Shown one piece after another: positions 1,298 to 21,440 of a stretch of DNA of 64,000 nt. The stretch lies in contig NW_020844790.1 in NCBI RefSeq assembly GCF_003704095.1, forward strand, positions 62,001 to 126,000. The letters run 5' to 3'. The notes below the pieces were generated by a model. The model saw only the letters and a program-made list of their open reading frames with translations. It did no database searches and was not told the DNA's origin. Position numbers and translations under genes: made by a program. The stretch is from Pocillopora damicornis (taxonomy: Eukaryota). Position 1 is the stretch's first letter. Every line of letters begins with the position of its first letter.

Positions 1298-4200
1298 TCA
1301 GACATTAACTTGTACTTCTTCTGCTGGAAACCAGCTGTTCACGGACGCACTCCGTTCTACTTCGATTTTGGCACGTTCAGAACCCTCCGGGGACTTCCTT
1401 GGGCTGTCATTAGGATCCACTTGTAATGAGTCCCCCTTCCTTGGGCTGTCATTAAGATCCATCTGTAGTGAGTCCTTTCTCCTTGGGAGCAACATGGGCG
1501 TTATGGACCGCGGAGGCGTCCAGTCAATATGGGGAAGAATCCTATTTTTTCTTTGGGGCAGAATGGGCAGAATGGGCACACTGGAGTGACTGCTTCCAGC
1601 AGAATTCGGCCTCGAATTAGACTCAAAGTCTTTGATTTTGATAAGTGGAACTGTGAAATTGCGACTAACTTTTTCCTTATCTGCAGGCTGCGAGGTTTCC
1701 GGGCTATTATCGTTCTCCTTAGGATCTTCTGAAGTAACAACCGACTGCATATTCGATGATGGGGTTTCACTCCTCGAGAACTCAGTCAGCTGGGTTGAGG
1801 AACTCTGAACACTTTCCTTGTCGAAAAGTCTTTTTCTGAAAATTTTCATCAGGAAGAAGAAAACCACGACTGCTATTATGAAACAGACGAGAAAGGTGAC
1901 AGTCACAGAAATGCCGATAGCGGTAGATACTTGAGAGCCTGCAGTGCCTAAAACCGGACGTGCTGTTTGTGTAAAAGAAAACGAGAAAAAACTGTCAGTT
2001 TGTAACAAATGAATTCTTAAAATTGAATAACATTTTCTATTCATCCGCAGATACCAACTTCAATTAAAGGAGCCCTTTTGTTTAAGTCTCGTGACAATCT
2101 TTAGCAGGTGCAGCCGAATCGCGTCAGTAGAGACGTTGAGAGTTTGATGGTTGTTCGGAAAGTCGTTCGCATGATTAAACCATAAACTCTAATAAGTGAC
2201 CAAGACAGGATTTCTCCTTACAAGTTCAATAAAATACCAGGCAGGCAAGTGATGAGAATAAAGAAAATATCAATTAGGGGATTATTGGTTGATCCGGCCA
2301 ATACCAAATTCTCCAAACCAACATAATAAGGACTGTATGGCAGACAGTAAGGAGAATTACTAATGAGATCCTGGGAGTAAAAGGGTTGAAGCTGTAATTT
2401 ATTATAAGGAAAAATGGTGTAGGGTGCAGGAAAAGGGGGATGGGAAATGCGCATATAGTTTTCTTGTATAGCAAAAACTGTTAAGTTTCGTACTTTCCGT
2501 CGTCGTAAAATTCTCCATCACGGCGGTGGTTGTTCCGGGACTAGTAGTTGTTTCTGCATTCTTTCTTATAGAGAAAGTCTTGTGCAATCGTTGAAGAGAT
2601 TGTATTCCTGCCTGACTACTGACGCCATTTTTGGAAATCACAGATATATTGTAGACCGTATCTGAGTTGAGACCAGTTATCGTCACTTGGAGCGAGGTTA
2701 GGTCTACAGAACCAGGCCAGAACTGTGCACCGTTACAATATTTTGAACATGAACCAGAGTTTGAGCAAGTAGTACATTGAACGTCGTATTTAACGTCATT
2801 ACGCCCTCCGTTGTCTGCAGGCGGAGACCATGCAACCACCACAATGCTGTCTGTAAGTTCTGTGATGTTGATATCTTTGGGCTCTGAAGGAGGGGCTAAT
2901 AACATAAATACAGTTATATTACTTTCTAAACAAATCAAAAGTGTGTTGTATCAGTATGATGATTTATGATATGTATGTCAGAACGCTGCCTGTTTTCTTT
3001 TACTTAATTCTTTTCATGCAACGTTAGTTTCAAATGCAGGGATGATTCTTTAATCGGTTGGTTTTGCGGAGAGCCGGGATGGTGAACAGATCTGGAACTG
3101 ACGTTTCAAAAATTAATCTGGGTGCAAGTCAACGACAGAGTCAAGCAATCCTTACCAGTAAGAAACCGTCTACAATTAGCACATTCCTACCTGTGCAGTC
3201 ATCACTCACAGCATCCTCAGGGGCCCTGTAAAATCCATTATTGCAGATGCAAGAACTATGATTAGGATCAGGTGCACTGTTAGCAGGACATGCAGCACAA
3301 AAGCCATTACCAATTGACGCTTTATATCGGCCTGTCTGGCATCCTGAAAAGCACATTTACAAATAAAATTCAGAAAGAAATAAATTGACAGCTGAATTTT
3401 TAGGTCGTTAGAACCAAATAGATTTGGAAGGAGCTGCGTTGCTATAATTATTTCGGGTAAGTTTTTAGGCAGAACAAACTACATAAACTTGAAATAGTTT
3501 TCGATTATGAGTTCGGGAAAAAAAGAAAAACGCACAAGAGGTAATAAAAAGCAAAAAAAAATGAACAAGGAGTACAGGGTCGAAAACTGTTTGCTTTGCA
3601 TTCAAGATTCATTAGCTGTGACTTAATCGCGTAAGGAGAACCAACAGTAAATTTTCCAAGGATTTTTAAGACAAGCACGGTTGTGAAGGGTGCACAAAGA
3701 AAATAAAGCTAAATTTACACACTATTTAAACACTACATAGGGGGTTGTAACAGATGAATATCGGAACTTGTATAGGTACACTGCTAGACCAATTTCGATG
3801 TCTAAGAAAATTAATTTAAATTGTCAGAGGAAAACGTGGATGTGCAAAGAAGGGCGTATTTGAAAACAAAAGTCCCTCTTACCGACGCACTTGTCTCCCA
3901 CTAATTCATATCCAACTGAACATTGACATGTGACCTGACTGTCCATCATCCATTGACCAGAACTAAGACACGTAAGAGAGAGTGTGCTGTTGCTGGGATA
4001 TGGCGATGCCTTTTCAGAACAGTTGCCTTTGACAGTAGTGTTTTGCTGGCTCGACGAAGGTGCAGCAATCTTTTGGAAGACAACTCCCTGATTGACAACA
4101 GTTGGACAGTATAAGTATGACAAAGTAACAGATGTAAGCGATAGGCAGGCGCCTGTGTCTCGAAACCCAAAGTAGATGCCGAAACTATTAACAGCTAAGG

Positions 4201-7200
4201 TCAAATTAACTTGATTGACTTGGGAAGGATCCTGTTGCGTCCAAAGATTGGTGGCATTGACGGTTTCCACAAATGTGAAATTACCGGATTTAATATCGCG
4301 CTTAGTTACGCCACTTGCAAAAGGCCCTTCCGTTTGAAGCGCGTAAACGCTGAAGCTCTCTTTGCAAAAGTTAAGTTCAGCAGGACACTTTCCAACCATG
4401 AATGTAAGCCCGAGTCGAACTTCGTTTGCTCCCTGTAGGTCAACATACTCTGAGATCAGCCAGCTGTTTGTATGATTAGTTCTTGTTTCCGAAAGATCGC
4501 ACACAGCGTAAGATCCACTGATTCCATCCTGGGACCACTAAAATCAAATAAATATAATATCACAACGATACTCTTTGAAATAATCATGTTGAAAAGAAGA
4601 AATAAAGCTTCGACGACACTGATCAATAAAAAATTACTAAAAAAGACTAGATAAAAAAAACTGTCACAGAAAGATATAATTTTTTCATTGTAGAAATGTA
4701 ACTCGTAAAGGGGAGGTTGGAAATCTTTTCGTGATAGATTGCCAGGCCGCTAACAATTTACATTAGCGAAGGATGAGCCCTATGCTCAGAAATCTTGAAA
4801 GGACCGTCTCGAATAAGTCTCTTGGCCAGGATAAAACGCCGCGTTGATCGGCCATGGACAGCCACGAATATAAGGGAACAGGGCGGGTCGAATTATCATG
4901 ATGAATGAATGAAGCTTTGTAAGATTTTTACCAATAAATATTGCTGACTTATCAGCCTGCTGGTATGAAATTAATGTGTTATTTTCTACTTAGTTATCTT
5001 TTATTCTCTTTCAGGCACCATGTTAACTAGACATCGATTGGTCTTTCAGCTAAATAGTTTTGTTCTTTTTAGCGCAGTTACTATATTCACCCAAGTAGGA
5101 CCTAAGATTTAAAACCTCGAAAACTTTGCGTTTTGATGAACTGGAGGGTACTTGAGGTCAGCTCTCCTTGTTGGGATCAGATGGTCAAACAGAGTCAAAG
5201 ACAGTTCATCGATAAGTTTTCGAGGTCTTAGAACTTTGGTCTTAGTTATTGAGACACCCGTGTAGCTTTGCATCGTGCCGGAAGAGGTTAGAATGTGTTT
5301 ACCACCCTTGAGGCTAATTTTACTTTTCTGTGAGGGAATAACGTACATGCCGCGATCCACACATACTGGTGTACCGTGTAAATACACCTAGCTATGAGTG
5401 AAAAACACTTTCAAGCTAGTTTTCAAGTATGAAACAGAAGATATACAAAACAAATATTGTTGCTGTTGTTGTTTTTAAAAAAAACATTGGGATCAAGACA
5501 GACTTAGCAGGTCTAATTTTCTTATGTTATTTTAAAAAGCACTGAAAGATAGTGCCGCTCTATTTTTGTCCGGTGTTGAGTTCCAATAAGCTGGTGTATG
5601 AACGAAGTTCTCTGAAAAGATTATGAAGATCGATTTGTTTGTTCCTAGTTGTTAATTGAGGTGGTGAAGTTTTTTGTTTAAGAGTTAAGAGCCAACTCAA
5701 AAGTAAATTGAGGTAAGTGTGGTGATGACGTTACAGAGGCTCATGTCAGATTATTCATTATGGCCCCATAGCGAAACCTGTAGAATATTACAGAATTTTA
5801 TGATATTATTTTCTAAGACAAGATAAACTCTTTAATACACGTATACGTTTTGGCAAGAACACACGGAGTTTTAGTAACAAGAGAAAACCAAATACGAATA
5901 AGTGCAGTGCTAGATCATCGATGGAATACAATGCTATTACGTAATTCAGTTTTGGCACAAGAAAATCCGAGAGCCTTCGCAAACTAATTATCACAACTTA
6001 AAAGCCCGTTCAATGACAAACGGAATACAAGGGTTTTAGAGTGGGACGGTAGTGGTAAATTACAAGATACAGGACGGATTAACTTCGCATTTGAAACCGA
6101 TTTCACAGTCATTATCTGGCGCCAGGCTGGCCTCGCAGAACACAAACCCTCCCGACTTCATGGAGCCAAACTATCCGAACGTCATCCAGAACAATCAGAG
6201 TTTAGTTAGTGGTAGGTTTTAACTAATCTTTCAGTCTATTAGCGATAATAAGTCTTAAACGATGCTTTACCATGTCGGGATTACAGGTAGTGGCGATACC
6301 ATTCATAGGACAAGTAGTTGTTTTCAACGGCGAAACGATTAAAGAAAATATTTGGATACGTAACCTTTTGGACATGTGAAAATAAACCATTGTTTGCGAA
6401 TAATTGATCTACGAAAACAGCAATTCTAGAGAATTTACTGGCGCCAGTTAATCAAATCAGCGTCTCTGAATTGCGTCATTTTAGTAAATTCAAAAGGTTC
6501 CGATCCCTTTCACTTCATTGATTCATTAAAAGGAGTCTCGTCAAGGAGATGCGAATTGAAAGCATTGTAGCTCGATGGGCTCTAAGTTGATCATGTAGAA
6601 CGCATGGGTTTATCTACCCTCACGAAAACGTCCAAAGGAAAAAATTGATTAGGTTTACAGAAAAGATTAATATTTTGTACTACCACTGCATTTTTCCAAA
6701 CTTGGGATTAACCTTTGAGGCTAGAAAGTAAAAGCATTGTGACTTCTTTGGAAAGCAAAAACGCAGTTTAAAAATTAACGTTAACGATTCCTACGCAATC
6801 TAAGCGAGTGACCCAGTGCATCCTTGCCCTGTGACATGCTATGGAATCATTCTGTTTCGTTATATTTAACAGTAGGTGATAAACAAATACAGAAGCTGTC
6901 AATTGTTATTACAATATGATCAAATCATTCACACTGTAATGGTTCTCCCTTTACTAACTCTAACGTAAGGTATAACCAGCACTGTATGTACTCTAATTGA
7001 CTGATGTTTTGTCTTCGAAAACTAAGTGGCTGTAACTGTCTTTTCGTTGTGTATCTTGGTACGTACAAAAAGGTGGAAAGAGAGAATCATTGATAAAGAA
7101 CAAAATAACTAAGCATTCCGGCCTCTATCTTCTGTAGAGCAAATATCTCACGAACTTCGAGCTGCGCGCGGGTGGGTAAACTTATTTTCCACGGCCCTAT

Positions 7201-10200
7201 TTGGCTTTGTCGCTCGGTTATTATAGAAACAAACCTGGCTTAGTTATCCGTAAGAAGGCTTGCTTCTTTTTTGATCATAGCGAACTGATCAAACTTGCGC
7301 AGATTTTACTTAAGAGCTCGAATTGCACGCTAATACTTGACCAGCGCCCCTTTTTCACTGGAAGAATTTCAAGCACTTGCAAAAAGTCATTGGAGTGCGA
7401 CTTATCAAAAGCGAAGTTATAATTCTGGCAAAAATACTTTAAAAAGGAGTCCATTTCAAAAATTTGATCTCCAGTAAGAGTTTTATAGAAACTAGAAAGT
7501 GAGTACGCACGAAAGTTTTTCCAAATTAAATATTCTTTTTCCGCTAAAAAATGTCGGGAATGGCGTCAAGAGTGAAAAGGGTCACTGCATCAGAGAGATA
7601 AATAATCCATATTTTCAATGTGTTTTGGATTTGTGTGTTGACGACGAGGCGTAACCAGAATGGACATAAAAGGAGCGGCATAAAAGAGAGCGCTATTATG
7701 AAAATACCAATGCACAAAGCTGTGGACTAAATTAATTTTGTTTCCTTACTAAGTAGGGGGTAAAATTCGGTCGTAGAGACAAAAACTGTTGTAAGAAAGA
7801 ATTTTTCCCTAATAAAATTTTGAACTGATGTAATTCAACTGCCCATCGAGATATCACATATATTGTTGTGACTAAAGGAAAAGGGGTATTTTTTTTCCTT
7901 GCAAAAAACTGTCTACAGGTAGTTTGATATTTTAATGACGAAACCCTTATCGCAAATGGTGCGGATTTGGGTTGTAGCATTTGAGACAGTTTGTGGGTAT
8001 GTTACCGAATTTGCGTGCGTTTTGATATAGCTTAATACCAAAGGTTACGAAATCTTCGGAAACGTGACTTAGCGAGTTATTATATCGACGTCTATCTTCC
8101 GAAAGCCAGTATCAGATGGTTTAATTTTCTCATCTATAAGGCCAATTACAAGAAAGCGAAAAGATTAAAGGATTTACAATCTCTGGTGTTTAGATTGGAA
8201 TTAGTTCCTGTTTAAAAAGGCACAAACTGCTGTTGTATGAATTGTGCTTCGGGCTCAATAGGTTTGGCTAATTAAATTTAAGTTAAATCGCTTGGTTTTA
8301 AAAGAGTCGACTAGTTCGATTCATCGAAGGGTTCCGAACACGATTAGAATCATTAGCTTTTCAGATTCGATTAAACCTAACCTTATCTACGGAGACTATA
8401 ATGACCTTGTGACTGCGATCTAACGGGATCCAAGGACAATAAGCGCAGCATTCTTGTGACAGAACTTGCCGCCTGAAAAGTCCAGAGCAATTGATCACGA
8501 TATGAAATTAAGTTATGGTCTCGCGAGAGTGGACCCAGCTGATCAAATTCTTTCAAACGAGTCTGCTTTCTGATTAGCTTATCGTTAGACCCTTAGAATT
8601 TTTTTAGTAAAAGTCAATTTAGCCCCTAGATTGCAAGATCAAGAACTGGTCTTCAAGACATTGCACGCAGCTTCACTCGGAGTAGTTCATGGAGTAATTA
8701 CGGTCCAACTTGAATTTTTCCTTGCATTTCTGTCCATAAATGATAAAGAGCGAGGCATTTCTTGGTCTTCTTTTGTCATAAGGATATAACTTATTTGCAC
8801 TTTAGTCATTAAGACAGCATATTTTGTTGCGTCACTGTACAACAATAGAAGAAAGAAGTAGCGAATTTTAATATCGGTAGCCCCGTTACGAAATGGTTTT
8901 CTGTGATCGTGTTTCACAAAAAAATTGAAAGTTTTAGGGGAAAGAGAACCTTCAAAGAAGAACTTCACAATTCATCTTCTTAAGAATTCCCGTTTAAACT
9001 CGACTAAATGCGTCAAAACGCCGCTTTCAAGCTGTAAATCTTAAATTATACGGATTTGGACTGGCCGCTTTGTGACCATTACAAAGAAATTTTATTACGA
9101 ACCCAGTGAACATTCTGTGTTTATCACAATACAATAGCACTGCCGAACACGAGGTGTGGAGAACAATTAGAGATGACTATAAAAACTTCGAGGAGGTCTT
9201 CTTGGATAGCCTAAAGGCTCGCTTCTCAGTACTGACTTGTTTATAGAACTCTTAACGGAGAAGTAAACGGTTCTGCCCCCTTGGTGAAACACTGAATAAA
9301 GAACAAGAAGCTAGAAACGTGTTCGAAAAGTCATCTAAGAACATTTGTTTACGTTCTGTTGCTTGACGGTAAACAATGGCTGTCACAGAATAAATGAAAA
9401 CGAATGAGCTAATCTGTCATATTTTTATCCGTCGAAAGACAAGCATCTCTTCAAGTATTATTTTCAGAGAAAGTTTTTGTATTACAAAATTGTCTGGAAT
9501 ACAAGAAACTGAAAGCACTTCATTCAACTGTTTGTACCTACCCCATCCCTAAACATGACAGATTTCTAATACTTGAATTAGTACGGGCACGACACGCAAT
9601 TTAAGGGAGCTCATTTCTTATAAACATTCCAGCGAGGATAATAAAATATCCAAATTAACAAAGCGACATGGTTTTCACGGATATTGAGTAAACGATGGAG
9701 CTAATAATTGTGCTACCAGAGAATAAAAGAGGGCAATGATTATCACTAAGAGTTGGTTATCTGGTAACATTTATAGCCTAAAATGCATTTGAATATTGGA
9801 CCCACATGTCAAAAGGGGTTTCATTGGCTAACGCATAGACATAAATTGTAACGAATCAATATTGACCTGTGACCTGCGTATATCGCATTTATTTCCTTTT
9901 GTATCTATTGGGACAAATGGCAACCGTACTCGTTGCGACGCTTTGTGAATCAGTTTCCTAAGATACGATAGGTATATGTTTTTTTAATGGTTTGACGTAC
10001 AAAGAAGTTGTTTAAGGCCGTTGGCTTCGGCTCTCAAACTTAAACGTGCTTCCCTCGTATTGCAATAAAAAAAATATTGACATTCCATACCGAACCTTAC
10101 ACAGTGACATGGTACGCAATCTTAAAATTTGGCCTCGAGCTATTCCTATGAAACACGGCCGCCTAGTATCAAATCTCTTGAATTACTAATAGGTTTTCGT

Positions 10201-10686
10201 TTTTTGTATATATAAAAAAAAATAATTTTAATCAGGTATAACACAAGAGAACAAAGCTTAATTGGCAAAATTCTCAACTAGGCCCTAGCCATCCTAAGCG
10301 ACGTGTGTAACAAGGCTGTGCGAATTTTACAGAAGGGAATAAAATAAATCATTTCGCAAAAGACATAAATTTGCTCATGGCGAATACTCACCCCACTCCA
10401 TACGCCGAACTCAAAACGGGTCAACCATTGCCAGGAAGAGGGTGCATTTTTGTCTTTATTCAAGAGAACAGCTAAAATTATGATTCAAAAATAAACTAAT
10501 TAGAACAAAATCTCCTCTCTTGATTAACTGTTCACTGATCAGAACTGGTGAAAAACAAAAGTTGCGTTGAAGCAAAGATGAACATTTCTTGTACATACCT
10601 CTCTCTGCCATGGCCTTATAATGTGTCAGGCCAATGGAAACAAGAAACACCACTTCCAAAAGTTGTTTGAACTCCTTTGATTTCAT
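1298..10686 (-). CDS. Eph-receptor-like single-pass membrane protein A, lacking kinase and SAM (~680 aa). Exons 10686-10599, 10471-10392, 4537-3883, 3343-3191, 2895-2494, 1962-1298
   Basis: Six exons with GT-AG introns in phases 1,0,1,1,1 sum to 2043 nt. Domains: signal peptide (MKSKEFKQLLEVVFLVSIGL); Eph N-terminus AVLLN..SWQWLT..SG|W; ligand-binding motifs (YAVCD..NSWLISEYV, CKESFSVY, GIYFGFRDTGACLSL); Sushi/EGF (CQTGRYKA..CPANS..CICNNGFYRA); Eph FN3-1 (APPSEP..WSPPADNGGRNDVKY); T-rich stalk; TM (IGISVTVTFLVCFIIAVVVFFFL); S/P-rich tail ending EEVQVNV*. The exon 5 donor and exon 6 acceptor are the least certain boundaries. Confidence 0.88.
2178..2390. repeat. ~210-bp MITE-like dispersed repeat (family copy 1)
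   Basis: gtgaccaagacaggatttctccttaca..gtgatgagaataaagaaaatatcaattag..accaaattctccaaac..ggcagacagtaaggagaattactaatgagatcctgggagtaaaagggtt. Homologous copies at 21213-21440, 49965-50175 and 50785-50992. Confidence 0.8.
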
Positions 10687-11379
10687 ATCGGCAATTTCAG
10701 CACCTCAAAGCTAAGACTTTTCGTGTCTTACATTCACAAAAGATTTCAACCAAAATTTCCCTAGTTACTGTTTTTTCACGTAGAATTTCACAAATTTTGC
10801 GCAACTTTAGTATGCGATCTCTCAACACGCACAGAGAAGGAACACGAATGATTGTCCACAGTGGAGCTAGTCACCATAAGACATACAGATCTTGTACTTA
10901 ACTCTGTACTTTTGTGTATGCGGATTATGCAAATTAAAAAACCAATAGCTGAATGTAATAGAAAACGTCAAATGGTAAATTGTTTGGAATGATCGATGAC
11001 GCTGACGTCGTAAGTGGGATGTGAACAAGGTGTCAAAGCAACGTTGTACTGAAATAACCCTGAAATGATACTTTTATTACTTTGCATTCAGAATACTCTC
11101 TTTAAATTTAGACTGGCCAAAACCAAAGCAAACGGTAAGTTTTCCGTCACGTTTACGCTTAAACGGATTAAGCTAAAGGTAATTATTACGCCATTAAGGG
11201 AAAAATTTCCCAAGAGGTTTAAACTCACAAAACTGGTTGAGCGCTAAAATAGTATGGTCTGTGCATTAGGCATGGCACGATTTTCGACATAATGAAGCCC
11301 ACAGACATACAAGAGACGGATGATTTAGGGAAAGACTGAACACTAGGGCTATCAAGTCGCTCACCTGCCGAAGACTAAC

Positions 11380-11660
11380 CTGGATTATCTTGCACGAAAT
11401 AACGGATTAGGAGGATTTTGTTCCTTTCGGATGGGATGCCTAGAGTTCATAACTGATTTACCCCTCCAGTTACTCGTTAGATTTCCCTTACACCACAAAG
11501 TTTCAACTCGATCATCTATATTCCTGGGTAAAGGGAAACACTGTGAACATCAAATGTCTCCACCTTGAAAACCACACGCATCGGCTTAGTCATACACCTG
11601 TGGCTGAATGCGCATCTTTCGATTAAGAGTGGGCATGCTACCAAATCATGTGGCCATTGC
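11380..11660 (-). mobile_element. Highly degenerate SINE, probably the same class as 16905-17190
   Basis: Contains tatattcctgggtaaagggaaacactgtga, the reverse complement of a decayed SINE core, and ggatgggatgc. Confidence 0.4.
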
Positions 11661-13210
11661 TTTTCCCACTTTTTCGCTTTTTAAACAGTGTAGAAAAAGG
11701 ATGCTTTTCTTACAATAAAATTTCGAGCGTAAACATGCGTTTTTAAGCTGATAATTTGATCAAAATAATCATAAGTAAAAAGCTACATGATCTCAGTGTA
11801 GGTGAAGCGGTCGCTCGGTATTAGGCCATCGAAAATGCATTAAATAGTCGATTACCAGATCAGATAAATTGGAGCTGAAATAATCAAATTATCATGTTTG
11901 TCTGCTGATAACTACAACTCGCGTAACTTGAATTCCTTCTTAATGTTAGAGTTTAAGGGTGACCTGTAAGCTAGGTTACAAGACGCAACACTTGTATTGA
12001 AGGTTACATAAAGTGAAATAGTACATTCAGTGAGCCAAGAATTCCTGAGGCCAAAATGATCGAGCCGGACAAGTTCTAGCTATACTAAATATGTAAGATC
12101 TTGATCTGTCGGAAGCTGTTTGTATTCAAAAGTCTCGTTCAATTTTTACAAGAATACAGTTTGATTGTTTTATTCTTGTTAGCACTGCAGCGTGGAAATG
12201 TTTTTACTGTAAAGTGTTATCACCAGTTATTGTTTTGTGAATCAAAATTAAGTCATTTCCAGACCGATAAGAATTTTTACTAAACAAAAGGGCTTTCTTT
12301 TTACATCAACAAAGTGAAGTGCAGATCTTTTAAACGTTTCGCTTAAAAATAGATCAAATCTGAATCTCGAAGGAGGTCAAAAAGCCTATCCAGAGGCTGG
12401 ATACTACAGGACCTGATCAGCTATGACGGGTCTATCCCGATAAACGGGTTTAAAAGGTGAGATAAATGACAATATACTCGCTGAATTTTATATACCAAGG
12501 AAGAGTATTAACCAATCTGTGCGTTATTGAATCAAGATAAGCAAGTTTATTCCAGTAGAAAGACTGCGCTTGAACAATTAGTATTACACCTTCTTGTAGC
12601 GAAAATTTGACTCCCGCACAGGATAATGTCTGTCCATTGTTATAAACGTTTAGGCATTCTTCCTCGGTCATCAAAGGCTCTCACAGAATTGTTTCGCTCA
12701 AATTCGTTGAATCTGTTCTTAAACCCTCACAACTGATCATTCTGGCCGAATTGTGGCCGTAATTTAACCACCTTTGGCAAAAATCATTTGTTGGGTGAAA
12801 ATCTAAGTGGTCGCTGCTATTCAAGTTGTCGCTGTTTATACCAGAACATAGAGCAGAGCAAAGATCATTCCAAGTCTTGAGAAAAAGTTATTCATTAAAC
12901 TAATAAAGAAGATTCCGGTCAAATATTCAACGAAGAACAAAAAGGGTAAAGTTTTTTTATATTTTCCGTACTTTGTTTTAGCATGACGAGCGAGCTCAAA
13001 ACTGCAGCTTTGGAATATTTTTACAATTGCTAATTCACATTATTAGTACAGTTTTTATTTTAAAATCAGAGCTACGAATGTCATTCATAAATAAGTTTAC
13101 CTTATTTCTTCGACACTCAGCGTTTAATTTAGGATGGCCTGAGATTTTTGCTTCGTTCTGACTTTTTTTTTCGTTTGGTCGAGCTTCTTCACGAATGAAA
13201 TAAGATCTAG

Positions 13211-13334
13211 TAGGTAAATTAGTGCTAACAACTGAGTTGAAAACGTAAATTGGCCACCGTAAAGAATAAAAAAGCTGACGCTTCGAGCGTTAGCCCTTCG
13301 TCAAAGCGATTGATGCCCTGAATTACCTTCTATA

Positions 13335-13373
<39 letters not shown>

Positions 13374-13380
13374 TACTCCC
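13211..13380. mobile_element. Penelope-like repeat copy with 15-bp TSD and degenerate hammerhead motif on the minus strand
   Basis: Same family as 62823-63078 (aactgagttgaaaacgtaaattggccaccgtaaag..gctgacgcttcgagcgttagcccttcgtca..cccaccgacgcagcaccacagtttctttagaaac). Flanked by TGAAATAAGATCTAG at 13196-13210 and 13381-13395. Confidence 0.78.
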
Positions 13381-15988
13381 TGAAATAAGATCTAGATTAG
13401 ACATGTACTTGCCGCTAATTAACTCCTAATTCATCTCCAAACAAAAACATGCCTCTTTTTCGACTGTAAAAGTTCTGAAATCATTTTAATTTTTAAAGAA
13501 AAGCAATTTCGATGTAATAAGTGACACCAGATGAGTATTTGAGCACAGATTATGACCCCCAGTAAAGAATGGCCCAGTGAAACAAACTGTGTTTTTCTGA
13601 TGGCGTGTCGAAGAGGAACAATGGATGCTCTGATTATTTCATGTGGAACTCTGTTGCATCTTTGAACTAAGTCAGTTTGTTAACTCAATAATTCTACCTG
13701 CTTCAGCACAGCTCAATCCCATTTGTATGACCGTGTTACGATGTTAATTAAGGGACGGTTGCATTTCTTTATACCGTTCCGTTTTTCCTAAATTTACATT
13801 TTCTTCCACAGGCCATGATCTCTTCGGAATAGCTACTTCAGGAAGGGAAAATTTTATCATTAACTCAGTTGATAAAACTAACACTAAAAACATTTCGCAC
13901 CTACTTACATTGGCGTGCCTCCTTGCGGCATAAGGTGGGTTATATTGCCTTTAGAATCATATCAACAAGCATTTGCTGCGATTACATATCTTTGAGTGAA
14001 TTGTCACAAGAACGTTAAGTGTTTTTAACCCATGATAAAAAAGAGGGTGGCGAAGACTCGTACACCAAACAGAAAGCTAAACTTGAGACACTGAGGAGAG
14101 GATGGAGACATTTCGCGCTTGACCCGTCTGTTTTCTTGTAAGATATCTTATTTAGATTTATTTAGATTATCAGTGTAGCAATTGTCAACAAAACATTAAG
14201 AGCCTCTTCAATTAATAACTTAGAGTCCATGCAATATTCAGTCAACAATGAAATACAATCGTTGCTACCAAGAACATGAATACAAAAGCTTGTAATAAGC
14301 CCTTTTTCACTCATGAAAGTGAGCTTGAAAATCGTATCCAGTGTGTGGTTTTAAGACGAGGTTTGATCGCTCAGGCGTTGGTAGTTCTCTTAATTTTTGT
14401 GTCTTCTGTGCCTTCCAGCAAGGCCGTTGGCGTTACGCTATGGTGACTCGTCTCTGGTTCAGCTAAGAATATGGCCATCTTCGAACGAATCTGATCGAGT
14501 TTCTTCGGATTAATCATTTTTTTTTTGTTTTTTTGTTTATTGATGTTTTTTTTGGGGGGCCAACCTCTGCATTTCGACTTGTCATCGATTTGAGCGTAAA
14601 AGCTACGTCGTCAAAAGTTCTCACATGTGAGCTTTACTCTAAACTTATCCAACATATCCTTTGTAGAAGAATGTAAATTGAAAAGAAAAAATTGAAAAAA
14701 AAAAGAAAAAGGAAGACAAAACAGTTTAACGTGGAGAAAGCTCGAATATTATAGGTATATTGATTGTGCTAGGTAAGTAGAGCGTACAAGGCGGCGAAGT
14801 TTTGTGTAATAACACATCTGACGCACATTTATTACATGTACCTATTCTAGTAATTTACTGCCCTGTCTCCAGCCTGTCAATTGACCAGTGTACAAACTCT
14901 GTTCTAAGCGAATCCTCCTTTTGACAAGAGCTGTTCATCACAATCCCTTTATTTTATACCGTATTGTTTTTTTTTTTTCAGCAATACTCTACAGCTATTC
15001 AAGTAGACACATGCAGTCAGAAATTAATAAGCGCAAGATGTCTTTAAATTTCTATGCTTTCGAACATCTTACTAGAATAAATCAACTGGAGTTTTTGATG
15101 GTCTGGTCTGGACTTGAGAAACATCACCCAAGAAAGAAAGAGTACTTATGATTCATTTCAGAAAGTTGTCTAACAAGTGTTTTTAGATAGATTATGGCGA
15201 ACCTCTCATTACACGCGTATCAAAATTAATATGCTTTCCAAACCCCTTATATATCACACCATTTAGGAATACAAACGATTTCTTGCATGTAGTGTGTTAC
15301 GAGCAGCAAGCTTGTCAACTTTTGAAATTTTCGAAGTCGCAAGAGGTCAAAAAAAGGCCTTATTGAGAGCTCTCAAATTTTTTTTTAACGTATTCCCAGA
15401 AATCAATGTGGTTTATGGTTTTATTTACTTACTACCAAAGATAGTTTAACGGGCAAAACTTTTTTCCGATGCGAAACGCCTTGGACCGCTCTTACAGAGA
15501 TCGCCACCTAATTGTTTTATGTTACGAGATTGAGTAGCGTGAGTGATGATTGATTAATTCACCTCTTCGGCGTTAGATTTCACTTGTAGTCTGACGTGAC
15601 TCATTCGAACACAAGTGGACATTCGAACACAAGTGCACGGTTTCGGTTCCTAAGTGTACTTCAAGAATGGTTATGACAAAGAGATGCACTTATGGTAATT
15701 GAAAAAAAAAAAAAAGAAAAACGATTCCCGATACCCCAACTCCTGGGTAAGAGACACAAAGGGTGATCCGGTCAAGTATTTCCATTTTCCTTTTTTTCAA
15801 TGATAAACTACTGTCCTATGAGCAGCACTGTACGAATTGAAATTGTAAATAATAGTTTATTCTCCCGCGCGTTTCGTCTGACAATGGGAGACTTCGTCAG
15901 GGAGTTGTAACAAGTCGGAAAAATAAGCTTGCCTATATCCACATAGAAAATACGATGTCCATTCTCGACCGTGAAGCAAAGTGTTAAG

Positions 15989-16171
15989 TAGCCAGCGAGA
16001 CAAGCGCAAGGCGAGCGCGAAGCGCTAATCACGCGCGAGGGGAGAAGTGCGAAATGTTTTTTAATTCAGGTGCTCCTCCCCTCACGCGTGACTCGCACTC
16101 GGTGCTCGCCTCGTTCTTGCCTCCGTTTTGAATGAAAAACACAAAAAACTTACGCCTGTCCTACATGCTAA
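15989..16171. repeat. GC-rich MITE-like repeat ~350 bp upstream of the Eph-like B start
   Basis: tagc..gcta termini with internally self-complementary gcgagcgc/gctcgc and gaggggag/ctcccctc segments. Confidence 0.5.
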
Positions 16172-16512
16172 TTGTGAAGCAAGCACAAAGTATCTGCAAG
16201 GTGTGACAAGGGTGATGTACATGCGTGACATTTTTCGGACTTTACATGCATGGATGGGTACGTGGGTACGTGATGTGTCTAGGATCATAGATTAAGTAGT
16301 GGGCGTTGCAATTAGAGAACTTATCATGTCGAATTCAGCTCGACTGGTTTTCATAACAGCGATTAAAGCGATACATGTGTTTTGAATGCAGCTTTCGGCT
16401 GGCTTTAATTGCTTAAAGTTCGCTAATCTCGAGTTTTGTTTCATAAGGAATATCAAGGACTTCATTACACTGTACATATTCGCGTATCACATCTGAGGCA
16501 CCGTTAAAAGAC

Positions 16513-19500
16513 ATGGAGATTGATAGATCAATGTTTCTTCGCCATAAGGCGATACCTCTACTTTCGTTGATTCAAGCAATCTTGGTCGTTCGTCTTGTTT
16601 CCTCCGAGACGGGTGAGTCAATGCAATTGTATTTAAGTAACCAATGGTATGTTTTAAGTGCTTTTTTTACTATAGTTCTCCAAAACGGACCTCATGAAGT
16701 CGAATGTTTCCGTGTCAGTTTCCGATGTCAAAATGCTAACTTGAGGCTATATCCTGTGTCTGGATTGAAACGCCTCTTTCTCTTATTTGTCTTTTAGTTA
16801 TTCTAGATTCTCATTCTCGATACGACCAATCATGGGATTGGCTAACCACATATGAACTGGCGACTGGTAGCGGGGTAAGAAGCTTCTTTCAAAGTGATCT
16901 AAATGTAGTGGCTCAGTAATGTGGGATTCAATATTTGTGGTTTCAAGTTCCAGATTTAACCGCTGTCATTCATTTTGTTGTGATCTTGGGCAAGAAACCA
17001 CAGCGTCACAGTACCTCATTCCGTCACAGGAGTATGCATAAATGGGCAGCTAGAAACTAAGAGGGAAACCTGATGAAGGTTGGATGAGATAGTTTATCAT
17101 TCTGTCCAAGAGCACACAGCAATTTTCCTGGACGCTTCAAGCCAATGGGAATGGAATAAGCTTTGGCGGCAATGAGGTGGCCACTTGAAGCTGCAAGAAT
17201 CTGGTCATTATGGTGGAATAAACGGTTTTAAGTCATTTTTTCTGTCATTTCTCTTTAGTGGGGCCGCAGTTCACAAACAGGAGAGTACCTCGTCTGTGAT
17301 CTTCCAGAAACTGCAACGAAAAGCACCAACAGTTGGCTAATTTCAAATTTCATTGACCTGCAAGGCGCAGTATCAGTAACTGTTCAACTAGAATTCACTG
17401 CGAGACAATGTGACCGTCAGTCACTTCCTTTCTGCAAGGAATCATTCATGTTATATGTCTACCAAACAGACCAAAGGTTAATATCTGGAGTGCAGAAATC
17501 AACGATTCTGGCTGGACATTTTACGTTCGCTGCAACCATCGCTCCTATTCACGTGTGGAATTCTGCTCAGGCGAGAATAACAAACAAAGCAGCAGTTGGA
17601 CTCACTGTTCAAAGCAAAGGACTTTATTTAGGATTTCGAGACATAGGAGGGTGTATCGCACTCGGGAAAGTTCAAGTTGTTTCCAACTTTTGTCCTGGGA
17701 AAATCATTGGTGGGGCAAGTTATAATAGAACCCCTTCTCCTCCAAATGGACATGCTGTCAAGGTAAATGGTAACTGTGCAGTAAACTCAGAGAGTCCGCA
17801 TAACGCGAACACACTACACATGCAGTGTCAAAGCAATGGAACCTGGAATAGGCCAGCAAGTGCCGCTACTTGTCTGTGTAAACCTGGTTATCAAATCACT
17901 TCTCAGGGATGCCAAGGTACATAACTTGATCCCTATTATAATGTAGACTCACAATTAGAGGTATTAATTAAATCTAGAATATGTTGTAGTTCATCATGGC
18001 TATATAGATAAATGAATGTTTAGCCGTTTGTCTCTCGATGTTGATTAAAGCAGTAAGTATCTTGACTCTACGTCCGAGGCAAACGATTAAACGTTTAAAT
18101 CAAACATAGTTACCGAAAAACAGACAAAATGGACTTTTGGGTAACCAGACAGGCTGATAGGCAGACATCGATCGACAAGCGCAAGGACAGCAAGAAAGAT
18201 AGACAGACCGGCTTGGAGACTGCAAGACGGACTGAATGACTACTGGTGCCCCATTTATACAACCAACCAACTAGAAAACCGTCAGCGAACAAACAGGAGA
18301 CAATTCAGACAAACAGACAAAGAGATAGACAAGGAAACATGCAGACTGATAGAGAGAAATTGGAAGAAAAAAGCACGCGATATTTCTTTGAATACATAGT
18401 TAGGTTCCAACAAATTAATTTGATTATTTTCAATCAAAATTTTGCTCACAGAATGTCCTAGTGGAAAATTCAAACCCAGCCTAAGCAATTCAGAGTGCAG
18501 CAGCTGCCCGGTGAATACTAATTCCAACAACTCTAGACAGCAATGTGAATGCAATGCAGGATTTTATCGGGGCCCAAAAGACAAAAAAGAAGGAAAATGT
18601 ACAGGTAATGCAAACGACATGTTGCTAGTAGGCACTATAATGCCTGGCATCTGTTCAGTTATGCTTTGCAAATGACATTGTGTTGGTGACAAAAAGACTT
18701 TCAGTCACAGAAAACCCACGGAAATATGAGATCGATCTGCTTTACACCTTAAATAGAAAAATAAATAAGTATAACTAAAAACGCCTCCGTTTGCTTGATG
18801 ATTGGCAACCTTTCACTCAAAATAACAACAGAAATCTTGTAATTCATCACTAAGAAGTTGTGCGAAAGGCCCCCTTTCCCCTAAGACAATGTTGTATGAA
18901 ATTAGTCGTCATTATGTTAACACCAGACTACATTGAATTAAGGAAGAAGGAGATATATGAAAGTTAAAGTAAGAATTTCAAAAGAAGTGGAACGTGTCAA
19001 GAATGTTGTCGGATATTGTACATAGTTCGAAGTTTCCATTTGATTCTTTAAAAAAAGAAACAATCTTTCACGTTTTCTTTCATTTGCTTCAGCACCGCCA
19101 TCAGCTGCAAGAAATTTATCAATAATATTTCAAGACCAATCCGTAATCGTTGTTGCTTGGCTGCCGCCTTTAGACAACGGAGGGAGAGAAGACGTCGTCT
19201 ACGACATCAACTGCTTTCAATGTGATCCAGGTCCACACTGCAGAAACAAGCAACTCTGTGGTGGGAAACTAGAATTTTGGCCAGTGAGGTTTAATAATCA
19301 TTTTACGCATGTTACACTGACAGGATTACAACCCAACACATCATACATGCTTAGGGTTACTGCTGAAAACGGAGTGAGTTACTTGTATGGGCCTAGTCCG
19401 AGTAGGAATGCTGAGATTCAGTTTGGAACAAGGATTTCAGGTAACTATGCTGTATTCTGTTATAAAAAAAAAACTGCATAAAGTTTAGTGGTGAGCTAAG

Positions 19501-21160
19501 GCAGATTTGCATTATGGACAGAGTCTATATATAAACACTTAAATTAATTTGAACAAGAAAGTCAAGTTGCTATGCAGTCCTTTCTTTGTTTCCCAATAGA
19601 TTCAAAATCTGATTTACGTCACATTATTGTTAAATCTCACTTGAAATCCTTGGTCAGGTTTGCCCTGTAGCATTCTCTAGGGAGTCTAGTTCACTTATTT
19701 TGATCTAATAGCCTGTTGAGAGTGCATGGTTATCAAATTTCTGCTTTAAATAAAATACTTGACAATAGTGCGGAAAATTATTTCCTTGATTCTATTCACG
19801 TATAAGGAGAGGTACTCTCGGCTGCACTCATTCGTTAATTTTCTGATACTGCTTAGCCCGTGTGGAAATTGCAACACAATGTAGGCATTGCCAATGAAAT
19901 ATACTCAATAAAAGTATGTCTCTCTTTATTACAGCTAAAATGCTTTTGGATAAGACCTATGTTGATGACACTACAGCTGTTCTAACATGGAATTCCGTGG
20001 ATAATCCTCACGAGTTTTCAAGCTATGATCGCTATGAAATATCCTGCTTTAAATGTGATCAAGGCGGAGACAGTGTTAATCACCAATGTACAGAATCCTG
20101 TGGGGAAAAAATACGGTATTGGCCGGGTAAAGAAGGGCTCAAGGACAACCACGTGACTGTGTCGGAGCTGGAACCATCCACACTGTATAAGTTTGTTTTG
20201 TATGTCTGGAAATACCGTACTGCGTTGTCTTCAGTGTTGATCGAGACAAGTGCTTCCACAGAAGTTTCTCAGGGTAAGGTATTCAAGATATTTACCATTA
20301 GATTATAACTTTGGGAAAAGAGATCCAAAGAGAATAATCTAATGAGGTGCATAGCTAGCCTATGACCCGTAGGCCCAGATCTGCAATCTTTTTTCGCTCG
20401 CTTGACTCAGCGATATAACTCTTACAAAGGTTGAAACAAAAATTGGAATTTTTTTACGGCATACTCACGAGTAATTAAATAACAAAGGAAAAGCAAGAAT
20501 TAACCTCGTAACGTTAAAGCGCTAGGTTAGCACGTTTCCAGGTCTCTAAAAATGCCTTCAGCCAGTCAAAAAGCTGGATAGGGGCCTTCTAATTGTTTTG
20601 AAACAAATCTATCAATCGCTAAAAACTTGATGATGAGAGAGACTCATGATTAGATTAATTACTTTCCTCACCATCTATCAGGGAATAGACAGCCATTAGC
20701 GTCACCAGTCAGGTTTTTAATCGAGTAAATAATATTACTGTGAAACTCACACACTCAAAATGGCAGAGTTGCCTTTCAGTCACTTTTGAAAGACCATCTA
20801 CAATCTGTCACAACCATTTTAGGCACCTTGAAGTATTCAAATTCTTTTAAAGGTGAGGAGAAATAATTCATAGTAACTTACAAATTCTTAACTGTATTTA
20901 CTTCAGGTGGACAATTCTTTAACCTACCGACAATAATTGCCTTAATACTGGCAGGTATATTATTCATTGTTGCTGTGATTATATTGCTGGTCACTTGCCA
21001 TCTCAGAAGACGCTGGTACAACACTGGCAAATCCGTGGGTTCAGATAATAATGGCTCTAACGAGGGTACTTACTCCATTGAAAATACTGACAACACAATA
21101 ATTATGGAAGAAATACTACATGACATTGACCACTCTACAGCGGGGAATCAAATGCGTTAA
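16513..21160 (+). CDS. Eph-receptor-like single-pass membrane protein B, lacking kinase and SAM (~642 aa). Exons 16513-16612, 16798-16874, 17259-17916, 18452-18604, 19093-19440, 19935-20273, 20907-21160
   Basis: Seven GT-AG exons in phases 1,0,1,1,1,1 sum to 1929 nt. Signal peptide; VILDS..SWDWLT..GSG|W; LBD (YLVCD..NSWLISNFI, CKESFMLY, GLYLGFRDIGGCIAL); Sushi and EGF (ECPSGKFKP..CECNAGFYRG); two FN3 domains; TM (IIALILAGILFIVAVIILLV) followed by RRR and a ~50-aa tail ending in a stop at 21158-21160. Confidence 0.9.
16905..17190 (+). mobile_element. Degenerate tRNA-derived SINE in intron 2 of Eph-like B
   Basis: A/B-box-like gtggctcagt..ggtttcaagttcc followed by ttgtgatcttgggcaaga..cacagtacctc..caggagta..taaatggg, resembling the conserved central domain of metazoan SINEs (recognised by eye). 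Confidence 0.55.
18118..18360 (+). repeat. Decayed (GACA/GATA)n microsatellite in intron 3 of Eph-like B
   Basis: Many cagac/gacag/gatag units. Confidence 0.6.
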
Positions 21161-21212: not shown

Positions 21213-21440
21213 GTTAGCCTCTAAATTCCCATGAGTGACCAAGACAGAATTTCTCCTTACAATATCAATACAATATCAAGCAGATAGGTGATGAGAATTA
21301 AGAAAAATTTCAATTATATTAGCTAATAGTGGATCAGTTTATTGATCCAAAACCAAATTCTCCAAACTAACATCAAAAGAATTGTATGTTAGACAGTAGG
21401 AATAATTACTCACAAGATCTTGGGCAGACCAGGGGTTAAC
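21213..21440. repeat. ~220-bp MITE-like repeat (family copy 2), just 3' of the Eph-like B stop
   Basis: Aligns by eye with 2178-2390. Confidence 0.8.

What the first reader, a model, noticed from the sequence alone, without database searches (positions are those of the whole stretch)
1298..21160. Divergent pair of dedicated kinase-less Eph-like receptors: candidate decoy or co-receptor system
Seen: two paralogous genes transcribed head-to-head from a ~5.8-kb interval (10687-16512). Each has an Eph ectodomain and TM helix, then a stop with no kinase or SAM exons. I recognised no kinase motifs (GxGxxG, HRD, DFG) in the translated ORFs, and gene B is followed within ~2 kb by an unrelated convergent GPCR. 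Established: Eph receptors are tyrosine kinases. Known kinase-deficient forms are pseudokinases (EphA10, EphB6) or truncated splice isoforms (EphA7-T), which dampen forward signalling. Inference: here kinase loss is fixed in separate genes with intact, diverged ORFs, suggesting a maintained non-catalytic Eph subfamily acting as ephrin decoys, adhesion molecules or triggers of reverse signalling.
Basis: partly seen in the sequence, partly recalled or inferred. Interest (0 to 1): 0.8.

Follow-up and report, generated by a model that had tools for sequence, protein, structure and literature searches.

The report
Ancient kinase-less Eph receptor gene pair
Two neighbouring coral genes encode cell-surface proteins with the full outer part of an Eph receptor but no kinase inside the cell. 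They belong to an old family shared by stony corals and sea anemones, so Eph receptors without a catalytic domain arose outside vertebrates too.

Summary
Gene A (minus strand, 10686 to 1298, about 680 aa predicted) and gene B (plus strand, 16513 to 21160, 642 aa) lie head to head. Each encodes a signal peptide, Ephrin_lbd, a cysteine-rich region, fn3 (one in A, two in B), one membrane helix and a tail that ends at a stop codon.

- **No kinase:** a kinase profile found full exon series behind the other 10 Eph ligand-binding loci of this Pocillopora genome. It found nothing in the 64-kb window or in the 23 kb beyond gene A.
- **Expression:** RNA contigs from four runs show all six splice junctions of gene B, with the stop in its last exon. 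Poly-A RNA runs hold about the exon share of gene A.
- **Relatives:** kinase-less orthologues of similar length occur in Montipora, Acropora, Orbicella, Oculina and Nematostella. On a ligand-binding-domain tree they form one clade (support 100/98).
- **Tails:** both tail types carry conserved motifs. A-type tails end in a PDZ-ligand-like SWFP..Q..V. B-type tails carry HLRRRWY and a tyrosine motif.
- **Pairing:** conserved in Oculina, not in Nematostella.

Ephrin binding and function are untested. One 2019 paper mentioned kinase-less Eph architectures in passing. A word search of the scan's earlier notes on this genome found none on Eph or ephrin.

The parts
10599..10686 (-). Gene A exon 1: start codon at 10686 and signal peptide; donor GT at 10598-10597
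   Evidence: Sequence read. Phase 1 at its end, as in gene B exon 1. Aligns weakly to the Orbicella orthologue's first exon. Predicted; no junction reads.
10392..10471 (-). Gene A exon 2 (80 nt): first strands of the ligand-binding domain
   Evidence: Matches gene B exon 2. AG/GT sites. 74% identical to residues 30-56 of Orbicella protein P0183. 77% DNA identity to Oculina.
3883..4537 (-). Gene A exon 3: Ephrin_lbd plus sushi-like cysteine-rich domain
   Evidence: Pfam Ephrin_lbd E 1.1e-19 and Ephrin_CRD. PDB EphB2 E 2.8e-20. Splice sites.
3191..3343 (-). Gene A exon 4 (153 nt): Ephrin_rec_like / EGF-like module
   Evidence: Pfam PF07699. Same length and phase as gene B exon 4.
2494..2895 (-). 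Gene A exon 5: single fn3 plus Thr/Ser-rich stalk
   Evidence: Pfam fn3 E 4.1e-10. The donor at 2493-2492 was chosen by phase. The exact donor is the least certain junction.
1298..1962 (-). Gene A exon 6: membrane helix, cytoplasmic tail of about 180 aa without tyrosine, C-terminal ...SWFPAEEVQVNV, stop at 1298-1300
   Evidence: Open frame and acceptor. No Pfam family. 49% identical to the Orbicella tail. Single copy in the genome.
10687..16512 (.). Interval between the two start codons (5.8 kb). Pieces conserved with Oculina lie at 10908-10993 and 12196-12268
   Evidence: blastn against the Oculina head-to-head locus L030: 77% over 86 nt and 81% over 75 nt. A regulatory role is inferred only.
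16513..16612 (+). Gene B exon 1: start codon and signal peptide (RNA contig begins at or before 16442)
   Evidence: RNA contig of run X4 covers 16442-16612 and joins to exon 2. Donor GT.
16798..16874 (+). Gene B exon 2 (77 nt): first strands of the ligand-binding domain
   Evidence: Junctions 16612>16799 and 16873>17258 in run X4. Frame. 78% DNA identity to Oculina.
17259..17916 (+). Gene B exon 3: Ephrin_lbd plus cysteine-rich domain
   Evidence: Pfam (87.5 bits). Junction to exon 4 in all four runs.
18452..18604 (+). Gene B exon 4: Ephrin_rec_like module
   Evidence: Pfam. Junctions on both sides in RNA contigs.
19093..19440 (+). Gene B exon 5: first fn3
   Evidence: Pfam fn3. Junctions. Frame.
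19935..20273 (+). Gene B exon 6: second fn3, of the same cysteine-bearing type as the first
   Evidence: Pfam fn3. 40% identical to exon 5 over 52 aa. Junctions in all four runs.
20907..21160 (+). Gene B exon 7: membrane helix, 54-aa tail with HLRRRWY and EGTYSIEN, stop at 21158-21160
   Evidence: RNA contigs run from 20906 through the stop to 21251, with no junction beyond it. Motifs shared with Nematostella P0005. Single copy in the genome.

Best explanation
Shown: genes A and B are two single-copy, intact genes of a Pocillopora coral; gene B is shown spliced in RNA contigs and gene A is present in poly-A RNA. Each encodes a type I membrane protein with a complete Eph-receptor ectodomain, one membrane helix and a short non-enzymatic tail. 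There are no juxtamembrane, kinase or SAM exons at either locus. Both belong to one well-supported clade of kinase-less Eph-like proteins that also holds Montipora, Acropora, Orbicella, Oculina and Nematostella proteins. The kinase was therefore most simply lost once, before stony corals and sea anemones split, and the A/B duplication is as old. Inferred mechanism: the ectodomain binds membrane-bound ephrins (at least 10 loci in this genome) on neighbouring cells and can co-cluster with kinase-bearing Ephs, as vertebrate truncated or kinase-dead Ephs do. Output is non-catalytic but not passive. The A-type tail ends in a conserved hydrophobic-x-hydrophobic C-terminus (SWFP..Q.[ND]V) of the kind that docks Eph receptors and ephrin-B to PDZ scaffolds. 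The B-type tail keeps a juxtamembrane HLRRRWY and a tyrosine motif (E.[ST]Y.[IV]EN) that an associated kinase could phosphorylate. The expected net effect is contact adhesion or positioning, triggering of ephrin reverse signalling, and tuning of forward signalling. In stony corals the two genes are kept head to head and may share regulatory DNA.
For: Domains. Absence of kinase, with working positive controls: (10 of 12 loci positive, window and left flank blank); unrelated Ig/collagen/discoidin genes fill the space beyond gene A. Gene B: six GT..AG junctions in RNA contigs of four runs from four studies, a 1929-nt open frame and the stop in the last exon. Gene A: poly-A RNA runs hold 0.16-0.26 of the words of the 9.5-kb gene against a coding-exon share of 0.215, while DNA runs hold 0.93-0.98; its exons are colinear with the mRNA-derived Orbicella protein. 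Orthologues of 612-685 aa without kinase Pfam. Orthologous loci in Nematostella, Orbicella and Oculina have no kinase hit and are bounded by unrelated genes. Clade support 100/98. Conserved tail and membrane-helix motifs. Variants in gene B: 9 synonymous and 8 non-synonymous, pN/pS about 0.26. Head-to-head pair in Oculina.
Against: No binding, localisation or phenotype data exist for any member. Review PMC10084454 notes that Eph-ephrin interaction has not been shown outside bilaterians. The complex prediction could not be run. Gene A's junctions are predicted, not seen in reads. The PDZ and phosphotyrosine readings rest on short motifs alone. pN/pS rests on 17 listed variants from mixed runs; 11 more variants (coding or not is not stated) were not shown. 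The pairing is absent in Nematostella and was not seen within 10 kb in Orbicella.
Confidence: 0.7

Rival explanations
1. Pure decoys or dominant negatives. The proteins only soak up ephrins or poison clusters of kinase-active Ephs, as EphA7-T1/T2 does in vertebrates, and the tails have no signalling role.
For: The ectodomain is complete and no catalytic domain is present. Vertebrate truncated isoforms work this way (established knowledge; cited in PMC6993872).
Against: Tail motifs and even the membrane helix are conserved from Pocillopora to Nematostella. An in-frame 18-nt deletion in one run removes linker residues but spares the tyrosine motif. A decoy needs no conserved tail.
Confidence: 0.2
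2. The ectodomain no longer binds ephrins. These are adhesion or recognition receptors for another ligand, or homophilic ones, that merely keep the Eph fold.
For: The clade sits on a long stem (0.69 changes per column). Identity to kinase-bearing Ephs is only 25-30% in the ligand-binding exon. Loop lengths differ from EphB2 and EphA2 in the PDB alignment.
Against: Framework residues and cysteines align with EphB2 and EphA2. The genome has at least 10 ephrin loci against 12 Eph-LBD loci, which leaves room for dedicated pairs. Nothing tested here speaks directly to binding.
Confidence: 0.15
3. Artefact of incomplete view. Kinase exons exist but lie outside the stretches examined or were too divergent to detect.
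For: The first tblastn screen with canonical exons missed the divergent kinases of the C2466 cluster at E 1e-3, so sensitivity was a real concern.
Against: The HMM screen then detected those divergent kinases and still found nothing for A or B. RNA contigs end in the tail exon. Unrelated genes bound both loci here and in Nematostella and Oculina. Full-length mRNA contigs of Orbicella and Montipora encode 671-685 aa proteins that end in the same tail.
Confidence: 0.02
4. Decaying truncated duplicates (pseudogenes) that happen to be transcribed.
For: Tandem Eph arrays with partial copies do exist in this genome, for example in the C2466 cluster.
Against: Open frames are intact across 6 and 7 exons. 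Orthologues with the same architecture occur in six genera. There is an excess of synonymous change per site.
Confidence: 0.02

Closest known systems
Truncated Eph splice isoforms (EphA7-T1/T2 and similar)
   Same: Eph ectodomain and membrane helix without kinase. They are thought to turn repulsion into adhesion and to dampen forward signalling.
   Different: Those are alternative transcripts of a kinase-encoding gene. Here no kinase exon exists at the locus, and the tails are gene-specific, conserved and far longer in the A-type.
Kinase-dead Eph pseudokinases EphA10 and EphB6 (jawed vertebrates)
   Same: Non-catalytic members of the Eph family kept by selection. They are thought to act through other Ephs.
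   Different: Those retain the kinase fold, juxtamembrane segment and SAM domain, and the coral genes have none of these. Arcas et al. (PMC6993872) trace kinase-dead Ephs only to Gnathostomata. This clade is an independent and older loss.
Eph architectures without Tyr-kinase, noted by Krishnan et al. 2019 (PMC6485061)
   Same: Probably includes members of this very clade. The authors suggest catalytically null receptors that act in adhesion.
   Different: That paper counted only LBD-plus-kinase models as full length (17 of 85 cnidarian sequences) and treated the rest as partial or fragmentary. It gave no locus-level proof, clade, tail motifs or synteny.
Kinase-bearing Eph genes of the same genome (C1425:26167-39185, C3332, C1130, C2466 cluster)
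   Same: Same ectodomain plan and exon phases. The nearest one lies 24 kb beyond gene A's 3' end on the same contig.
   Different: They carry EphA2_TM-type juxtamembrane, kinase and SAM exons. Their ligand-binding domains fall in the sister clade.
Ephrin-B cytoplasmic tail
   Same: A short non-enzymatic tail that signals through a C-terminal PDZ ligand and conserved tyrosines. The A-type C-terminus and the B-type tyrosine motif work like this on paper.
   Different: There is no detectable sequence relationship, and the tails have no paralogue anywhere in the genome. The resemblance is functional analogy recalled from knowledge, not tested.

Membership tests
Eph receptor family (ectodomain definition) | N-terminal ephrin-binding domain (Pfam PF01404) | tested here: met
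   A: 71.6 bits on exon 3. B: 87.5 bits on the genomic frame. Curated cut-off 27. PDB EphB2 E 2.8e-20.
Eph receptor family (ectodomain definition) | Cysteine-rich region (sushi-like Ephrin_CRD plus Ephrin_rec_like/EGF) | tested here: met
   A: PF25599 27.0 bits (at the cut-off of 27) and PF07699 24.8 bits (cut-off 23.1). B: PF25599 31.7 bits; PF07699 21.1 bits is just under the cut-off.
Eph receptor family (ectodomain definition) | Two fibronectin type III domains, then a single membrane helix | tested here: inconclusive
   B has two fn3 exons and A only one. Both have one strongly hydrophobic helix, judged by hydropathy only. An Acropora isoform has two fn3.
Eph receptor tyrosine kinases (full definition) | Juxtamembrane segment with the two conserved tyrosines (PF14575 C-terminal part) | tested here: not met
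   PF14575 hits only C1425:33486 and C3332:52089 in the whole genome. No Pfam family in either tail exon.
Eph receptor tyrosine kinases (full definition) | Cytoplasmic tyrosine kinase domain | tested here: not met
   Kinase HMM with filters off: no hit at E<=10 in the window, while 10 control loci are positive. Orthologous loci are also blank. Orthologue proteins lack PF07714.
Eph receptor tyrosine kinases (full definition) | SAM domain | tested here: not met
   tblastn with the canonical SAM exon finds nothing. Pfam finds nothing in the tails.
Eph receptor tyrosine kinases (full definition) | C-terminal PDZ-binding motif | not testable with these tools
   The A-type ends in V-N-V. Orthologues end in F-N-V, Y-N-V and Y-D-V. 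The pattern fits a hydrophobic-x-hydrophobic ligand, but binding was not tested. The B-type has no such ending.
Kinase-dead Eph pseudokinases (EphA10/EphB6 type) | Kinase fold retained with degenerate catalytic motifs | tested here: not met
   No kinase-like sequence at all.
Truncated Eph splice isoforms | Produced from a gene that also encodes the kinase-bearing form | tested here: not met
   No kinase exons at or near either locus. RNA contigs show one 3' end structure for gene B.
Hexacoral kinase-less Eph-like clade (A-type and B-type; no published name) | Ligand-binding domain falls in the clade with the Montipora, Acropora, Orbicella and Nematostella kinase-less proteins (Oculina assigned by tblastn) | tested here: met
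   13-row clade, ultrafast bootstrap 100 and SH-aLRT 98. 93 in the wider quick tree.
Hexacoral kinase-less Eph-like clade (A-type and B-type; no published name) | Type-specific tail motifs | tested here: met
   A: AIG[IV]S..VT..VC helix and SWFP..Q..V C-terminus shared with Acropora, Orbicella and Nematostella; the Montipora model ends earlier, at SWFPEEEV. W[TS]PPR and SPEGSE are shared with the coral orthologues only. B: HLRRRWY, E.[ST]Y.[IV]EN and MEE shared with Nematostella.

The most novel reading that the evidence does not exclude
The A-type and B-type genes are a third, non-catalytic arm of Eph-ephrin signalling that arose in the hexacoral ancestor, long before and independently of vertebrate EphA10 and EphB6. 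They would bind ephrins but signal through their own conserved tails: a PDZ scaffold for the A-type and a phosphotyrosine motif for the B-type. In stony corals they would be co-regulated from a conserved head-to-head locus.
Probability: 0.4. Interest if true: 0.7.

Novelty: new variant of a known kind. Interest (0 to 1): 0.55.

Why it matters
Eph receptors are the largest receptor tyrosine kinase family, and their bidirectional signalling is usually explained through the kinase. The evolutionary literature I could search treats kinase-less cnidarian models as fragments (PMC6485061). It also states that kinase-dead Ephs go back only to jawed vertebrates (PMC6993872). A locus-level demonstration of a conserved, expressed, kinase-less Eph clade in corals and Nematostella shows that non-catalytic Ephs evolved independently in another animal lineage. 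It gives a genetically tractable system, since Nematostella has one gene of each type, for asking what an Eph ectodomain does without its kinase. The conserved tail motifs give concrete, mutable handles for that test.

Tried and rejected
- **Insensitive first screen:** tblastn with the canonical Eph kinase, juxtamembrane and SAM exons alone missed the divergent kinases of the C2466 cluster. I replaced it with an HMM of nine Eph kinase domains run with --max.
- **Whole-genome Pfam kinase search:** only 130 of 1021 candidates were scored, so I did not use it as evidence of absence.
There is no result, so nothing can be concluded about binding.
- **Word search with Nematostella B-type protein P0005:** returned only vertebrate Ephs and no further B-type orthologues.
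- **The look-up of encoding contigs for P0005, P0151 and P0152:** not on record, so Montipora synteny is unknown.
- **Origin of the tails:** I looked for a source in ephrins or other genes through a whole-genome search and found none.
- **Cross-species dN/dS:** not attempted. The nearest orthologues with DNA at hand are 60-70% identical in protein, so synonymous sites would be saturated.
- **Joined proteins:** All searches were exon by exon by reference, and reading frames were checked by exon-phase arithmetic.
- **Assembly gaps:** runs of N in the C2466 cluster and in L002 were left as they are.
- **Structure prediction of the ligand-binding domain:** judged unnecessary given the Pfam and PDB sequence matches.
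Full report
**Setting.** The window is C1425:62001-126000 of a 234-Mb assembly in 4393 contigs. Earlier notes of this scan call the organism a Pocillopora coral, and the nearest relatives of every protein I examined are stony corals. GC content is 35-43%, and the genes have short exons with GT..AG introns.

On the minus strand, open frames at 3827-4537, 3144-3356, 2405-2950 and 1301-2059 carry Ephrin_lbd plus Ephrin_CRD, Ephrin_rec_like, fn3, and then a hydrophobic helix followed by a long tail. On the plus strand, frames at 17259-17921, 18424-18672, 19044-19478, 19898-20305 and 20867-21157 carry the same series with two fn3. The best solved-structure matches of the gene A ligand-binding exon are EphB2 (E 2.8e-20), EphA2 and EphA4, with the framework cysteines aligned. 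The two start codons face away from each other across 10687-16512. A rhodopsin-family GPCR lies convergent to gene B at 23284-24288.

**Gene B model, supported by RNA.**
- Contigs of four public RNA-type runs from four studies give the junctions 16612>16799, 16873>17258, 17914>18450, 18601>19090, 19437>19932 and 20272>20906. The first two are seen only in run X4; the last four are seen in three or four runs. One 1670-nt contig spans exons 3 to 7.
- After placing the cuts on GT..AG, the exons are 16513-16612, 16798-16874, 17259-17916, 18452-18604, 19093-19440, 19935-20273 and 20907-21160. They sum to 1929 nt, and each exon is open in the phase it inherits, which gives 642 aa.
- The last exon holds the membrane helix, a 54-residue tail and the stop codon. 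Contigs run on to 21251 into a very abundant repeat. No junction leaves this exon.

**Gene A model, predicted.**
- A small exon matching gene B exon 2 lies at 10392-10471.
- With canonical splice sites and the same phases as gene B, the exons are 10599-10686, 10392-10471, 3883-4537, 3191-3343, 2494-2895 and 1298-1962. They sum to 2043 nt, or 680 aa.
- My one read-laying run went to gene B, so these junctions are not seen in reads. Three lines of evidence support them. Poly-A and oligo-dT RNA runs of several studies hold 0.16-0.26 of the sampled words of window 1200-10700, against a coding-exon share of 0.215, whereas DNA runs hold 0.93-0.98. The Orbicella orthologue, known from 2.4-2.5-kb mRNA-sized contigs, aligns colinearly with exons 2 to 6.
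- The donor of exon 5 is the least certain site.
Everything was done exon by exon by reference.

**Absence of a kinase.**
- The genome has 12 Ephrin_lbd loci.
- About 24 kb beyond gene A's 3' end, on the same contig, lies a canonical Eph gene (C1425:26167-39185, plus strand). It has juxtamembrane, kinase and SAM exons and ends in ...SLQVV.
- The space between it and gene A's 3' end is filled by Ig/collagen/discoidin-type genes.
- A first tblastn screen with the canonical cytoplasmic exons found nothing in the window or the 20 kb to its left. That screen also missed the divergent kinases of a six-gene Eph cluster on contig C2466, so it was not sensitive enough.
- I then built an HMM from nine Eph kinase domains returned by the protein search. 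I ran it with all filters off on six-frame translations of every stretch I had fetched. It found ordered series of kinase exons behind all 10 other Eph-LBD loci, including the divergent cluster. It found no hit at E<=10 anywhere in the 64-kb window or in C1425:39186-62000, apart from two chance-level matches (E 0.07 and 10), the better one inside a collagen gene.
- Pfam finds no family in either tail exon. The Eph juxtamembrane model PF14575 hits only two other loci in the genome.

**Relatives.**
- A full HMMER search with the gene A ligand-binding exon gave 583 hits.
- The closest full-length hits have no kinase. For the A-type these are Montipora XP_068697599.1 and XP_068753274.1 (684 and 685 aa), Acropora digitifera isoforms (659-797 aa), Orbicella faveolata XP_020620013.1 (671 aa), Oculina patagonica XP_078374621.1 (666 aa) and Nematostella XP_032236413.2 (612 aa).
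- For the B-type they are Nematostella XP_032228565.2 and XP_048581684.1 (649 and 664 aa) and a partial Actinostola protein.
- NCBI's pipeline names all of these 'ephrin type-A/B receptor N-like'. Montipora and Orbicella members also occur as complete open frames on 2.3-3.3-kb contigs, the size of an mRNA.
- In Nematostella the A-type gene spans 4.5 kb, and a convergent thiamine-pyrophosphate enzyme gene begins 1 kb past it. The B-type gene lies between a peptidase M1 gene and an eIF4G-like gene.
- The kinase HMM is blank on the Nematostella, Orbicella and Oculina loci.

**Tree.** I built a careful maximum-likelihood tree of the ligand-binding exon. It has 40 rows: the 12 Pocillopora loci, the cnidarian hits and 12 kinase-bearing proteins from the search, which form a separate clade and serve as outgroup (only one was identified, a nematode Eph). 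All A-type and B-type sequences fall in one clade of 13 rows, with ultrafast bootstrap 100 and SH-aLRT 98, on a long stem. Its sister, at 93/82, holds the cnidarian kinase-bearing Ephs. A wider quick tree agrees. No member of the clade with a known C-terminus has a kinase. Nematostella has both types, so the loss and the A/B duplication most simply predate the split of sea anemones and stony corals. Branching inside the clade is unresolved. I assign Nematostella XP_032236413.2 to the A-type by its tail, not by the tree.

**Tails.**
- A-type proteins share a near-identical membrane helix (AIG[IV]S..VT..VC). The coral A-type proteins also share W[TS]PPR.I[ST]P.L.PR and SPEGSE.
- Their C-terminus reads SWFPAEEVQVNV in Pocillopora...EEIQFNV in Orbicella...EEVQYNV in Acropora and SWFPEPQVQYDV in Nematostella. 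The Montipora model ends earlier, at SWFPEEEV.
- A valine at the end with a hydrophobic residue two places before it is the pattern of class II PDZ ligands. Eph receptors and ephrin-B use such ligands (established knowledge; review PMC10084454). Binding is an inference.
- The gene A tail has no tyrosine.
- B-type tails share HLRRRWY next to the membrane, then E.[ST]Y[SG][IV]EN and [IY]MEE.
- One run from a related organism carries an in-frame 18-nt deletion that removes DNNGSN just before this tyrosine motif and leaves the motif intact.
- Each tail exon is single-copy in the genome, with no paralogue.

**Selection.** Of the 17 variants listed inside gene B's coding exons across the runs, 9 are synonymous and 8 are not. 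With 433 synonymous and 1493 non-synonymous sites, that is a ratio near 0.26. This is a rough figure: the runs are mixed, and 11 further variants (not stated whether coding) were not shown. The stronger argument for maintenance is that architecture and motifs are conserved across six genera.

**The pair.** In Oculina, a 644-aa Eph-LBD gene lies head to head with the A-type gene, about 5 kb away, and its ligand-binding exon is 69% identical to gene B. A collagen/Ig gene is convergent downstream of the A-type gene, as in the window. Besides the two second exons, two non-coding pieces of the interval are conserved between the two corals: 10908-10993 and 12196-12268. In Orbicella no B-type exon lies within 10 kb upstream. 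In Nematostella the two genes sit 5.2 Mb apart on one chromosome. The arrangement is therefore conserved in at least two families of stony corals but is not ancestral to the clade or required for it.

**What is known.** Krishnan et al. 2019 found 85 Eph-LBD proteins in cnidarians. [quoted passage not shown] Arcas et al. 2020 concluded that kinase-dead Ephs trace back to Gnathostomata (PMC6993872). Two further full-text searches found no paper that describes this clade, its loci or its tails. That is absence in the library I could search, not proof of absence.

**Mechanism.**
- Shown: the architecture, the lack of any kinase, transcription, splicing of gene B, the age and monophyly of the clade, the conserved tails, and the conserved pairing in Oculina.
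- Inferred: ephrin binding (the genome has at least 10 ephrin loci), co-clustering with kinase-bearing Ephs, PDZ docking of the A-type, phosphorylation of the B-type tyrosine, and shared regulation of the pair.
- I rank a signalling-competent non-catalytic receptor above a passive decoy because of the tail conservation. I rank it above a non-ephrin receptor only on prior grounds.

**Verdict.** This is a real and well-supported feature. It is a new variant of a known kind: a dedicated, ancient, kinase-less branch of the Eph family with its own tails. The genes are already in RefSeq under automatic names, and the literature hints at them but does not characterise them. Interest is moderate to good for specialists in Eph signalling and in early animal cell-cell communication.

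Noticed in passing
G000:C1425:26167-39185 (+), left of the window; loci L001 and L002: A canonical Eph receptor gene with signal peptide, LBD, CRD, fn3, membrane helix, juxtamembrane YIDPSNYEDP, kinase and SAM exons, ending in ...SLQVV. It is convergent with gene A, with Ig/collagen/discoidin genes between them. An assembly gap (N run) lies in its last intron region.
   Followed up: partly
G000:C2466:146000-235102 (loci L005-L014): A tandem array of about six Eph-LBD plus fn3 genes, each followed by a divergent tyrosine-kinase exon series that the canonical Eph exons do not detect by tblastn. There are several N gaps, one or two copies look partial, and the contig ends inside the array.
   Followed up: partly
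window 21227-21350: A short element in gene B's 3' UTR has summed contig depth of 5,000 to 95,000 in every RNA run, with hundreds of contigs that diverge on both sides. It is a very abundant transcribed repeat (SINE- or MITE-like).
   Followed up: no
window 21044-21061: An in-frame 18-nt deletion (DNNGSN) in gene B's tail, seen in the contig of run X4 (a related organism) and absent in the other three runs.
   Followed up: partly
window 10908-10993 and 12196-12268: Two non-coding pieces of the A-B interval are 77-81% identical to the matching interval of Oculina patagonica (L030). They are candidate shared promoter or enhancer elements.
   Followed up: partly
window 35253-36806 (+) and 45622-46830 (-): Two large exons encode paralogous proteins with a cysteine-rich N-terminal region, a proline-rich linker and the first helices of a secretin-family (7tm_2) receptor. 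They point towards each other.
   Followed up: no
window 56189-57187 (-): A second intronless rhodopsin-family GPCR (7tm_1, E 2.8e-36), besides the one at 23284-24288.
   Followed up: no
G000:C1425:42474-58523 (loci L003, L004): Three or more genes combine discoidin (F5/8 type C-like), Ig and collagen-triplet exons, in both orientations. A collagen/Ig gene sits in the same position next to the A-type gene in Oculina.
   Followed up: no
protein P0180 (Acropora digitifera isoform X2, 797 aa): This A-type isoform carries the fn3 module twice (residues 328-439 and 467-578 both match gene A's fn3 exon), so the fn3 number varies within the clade.
   Followed up: no
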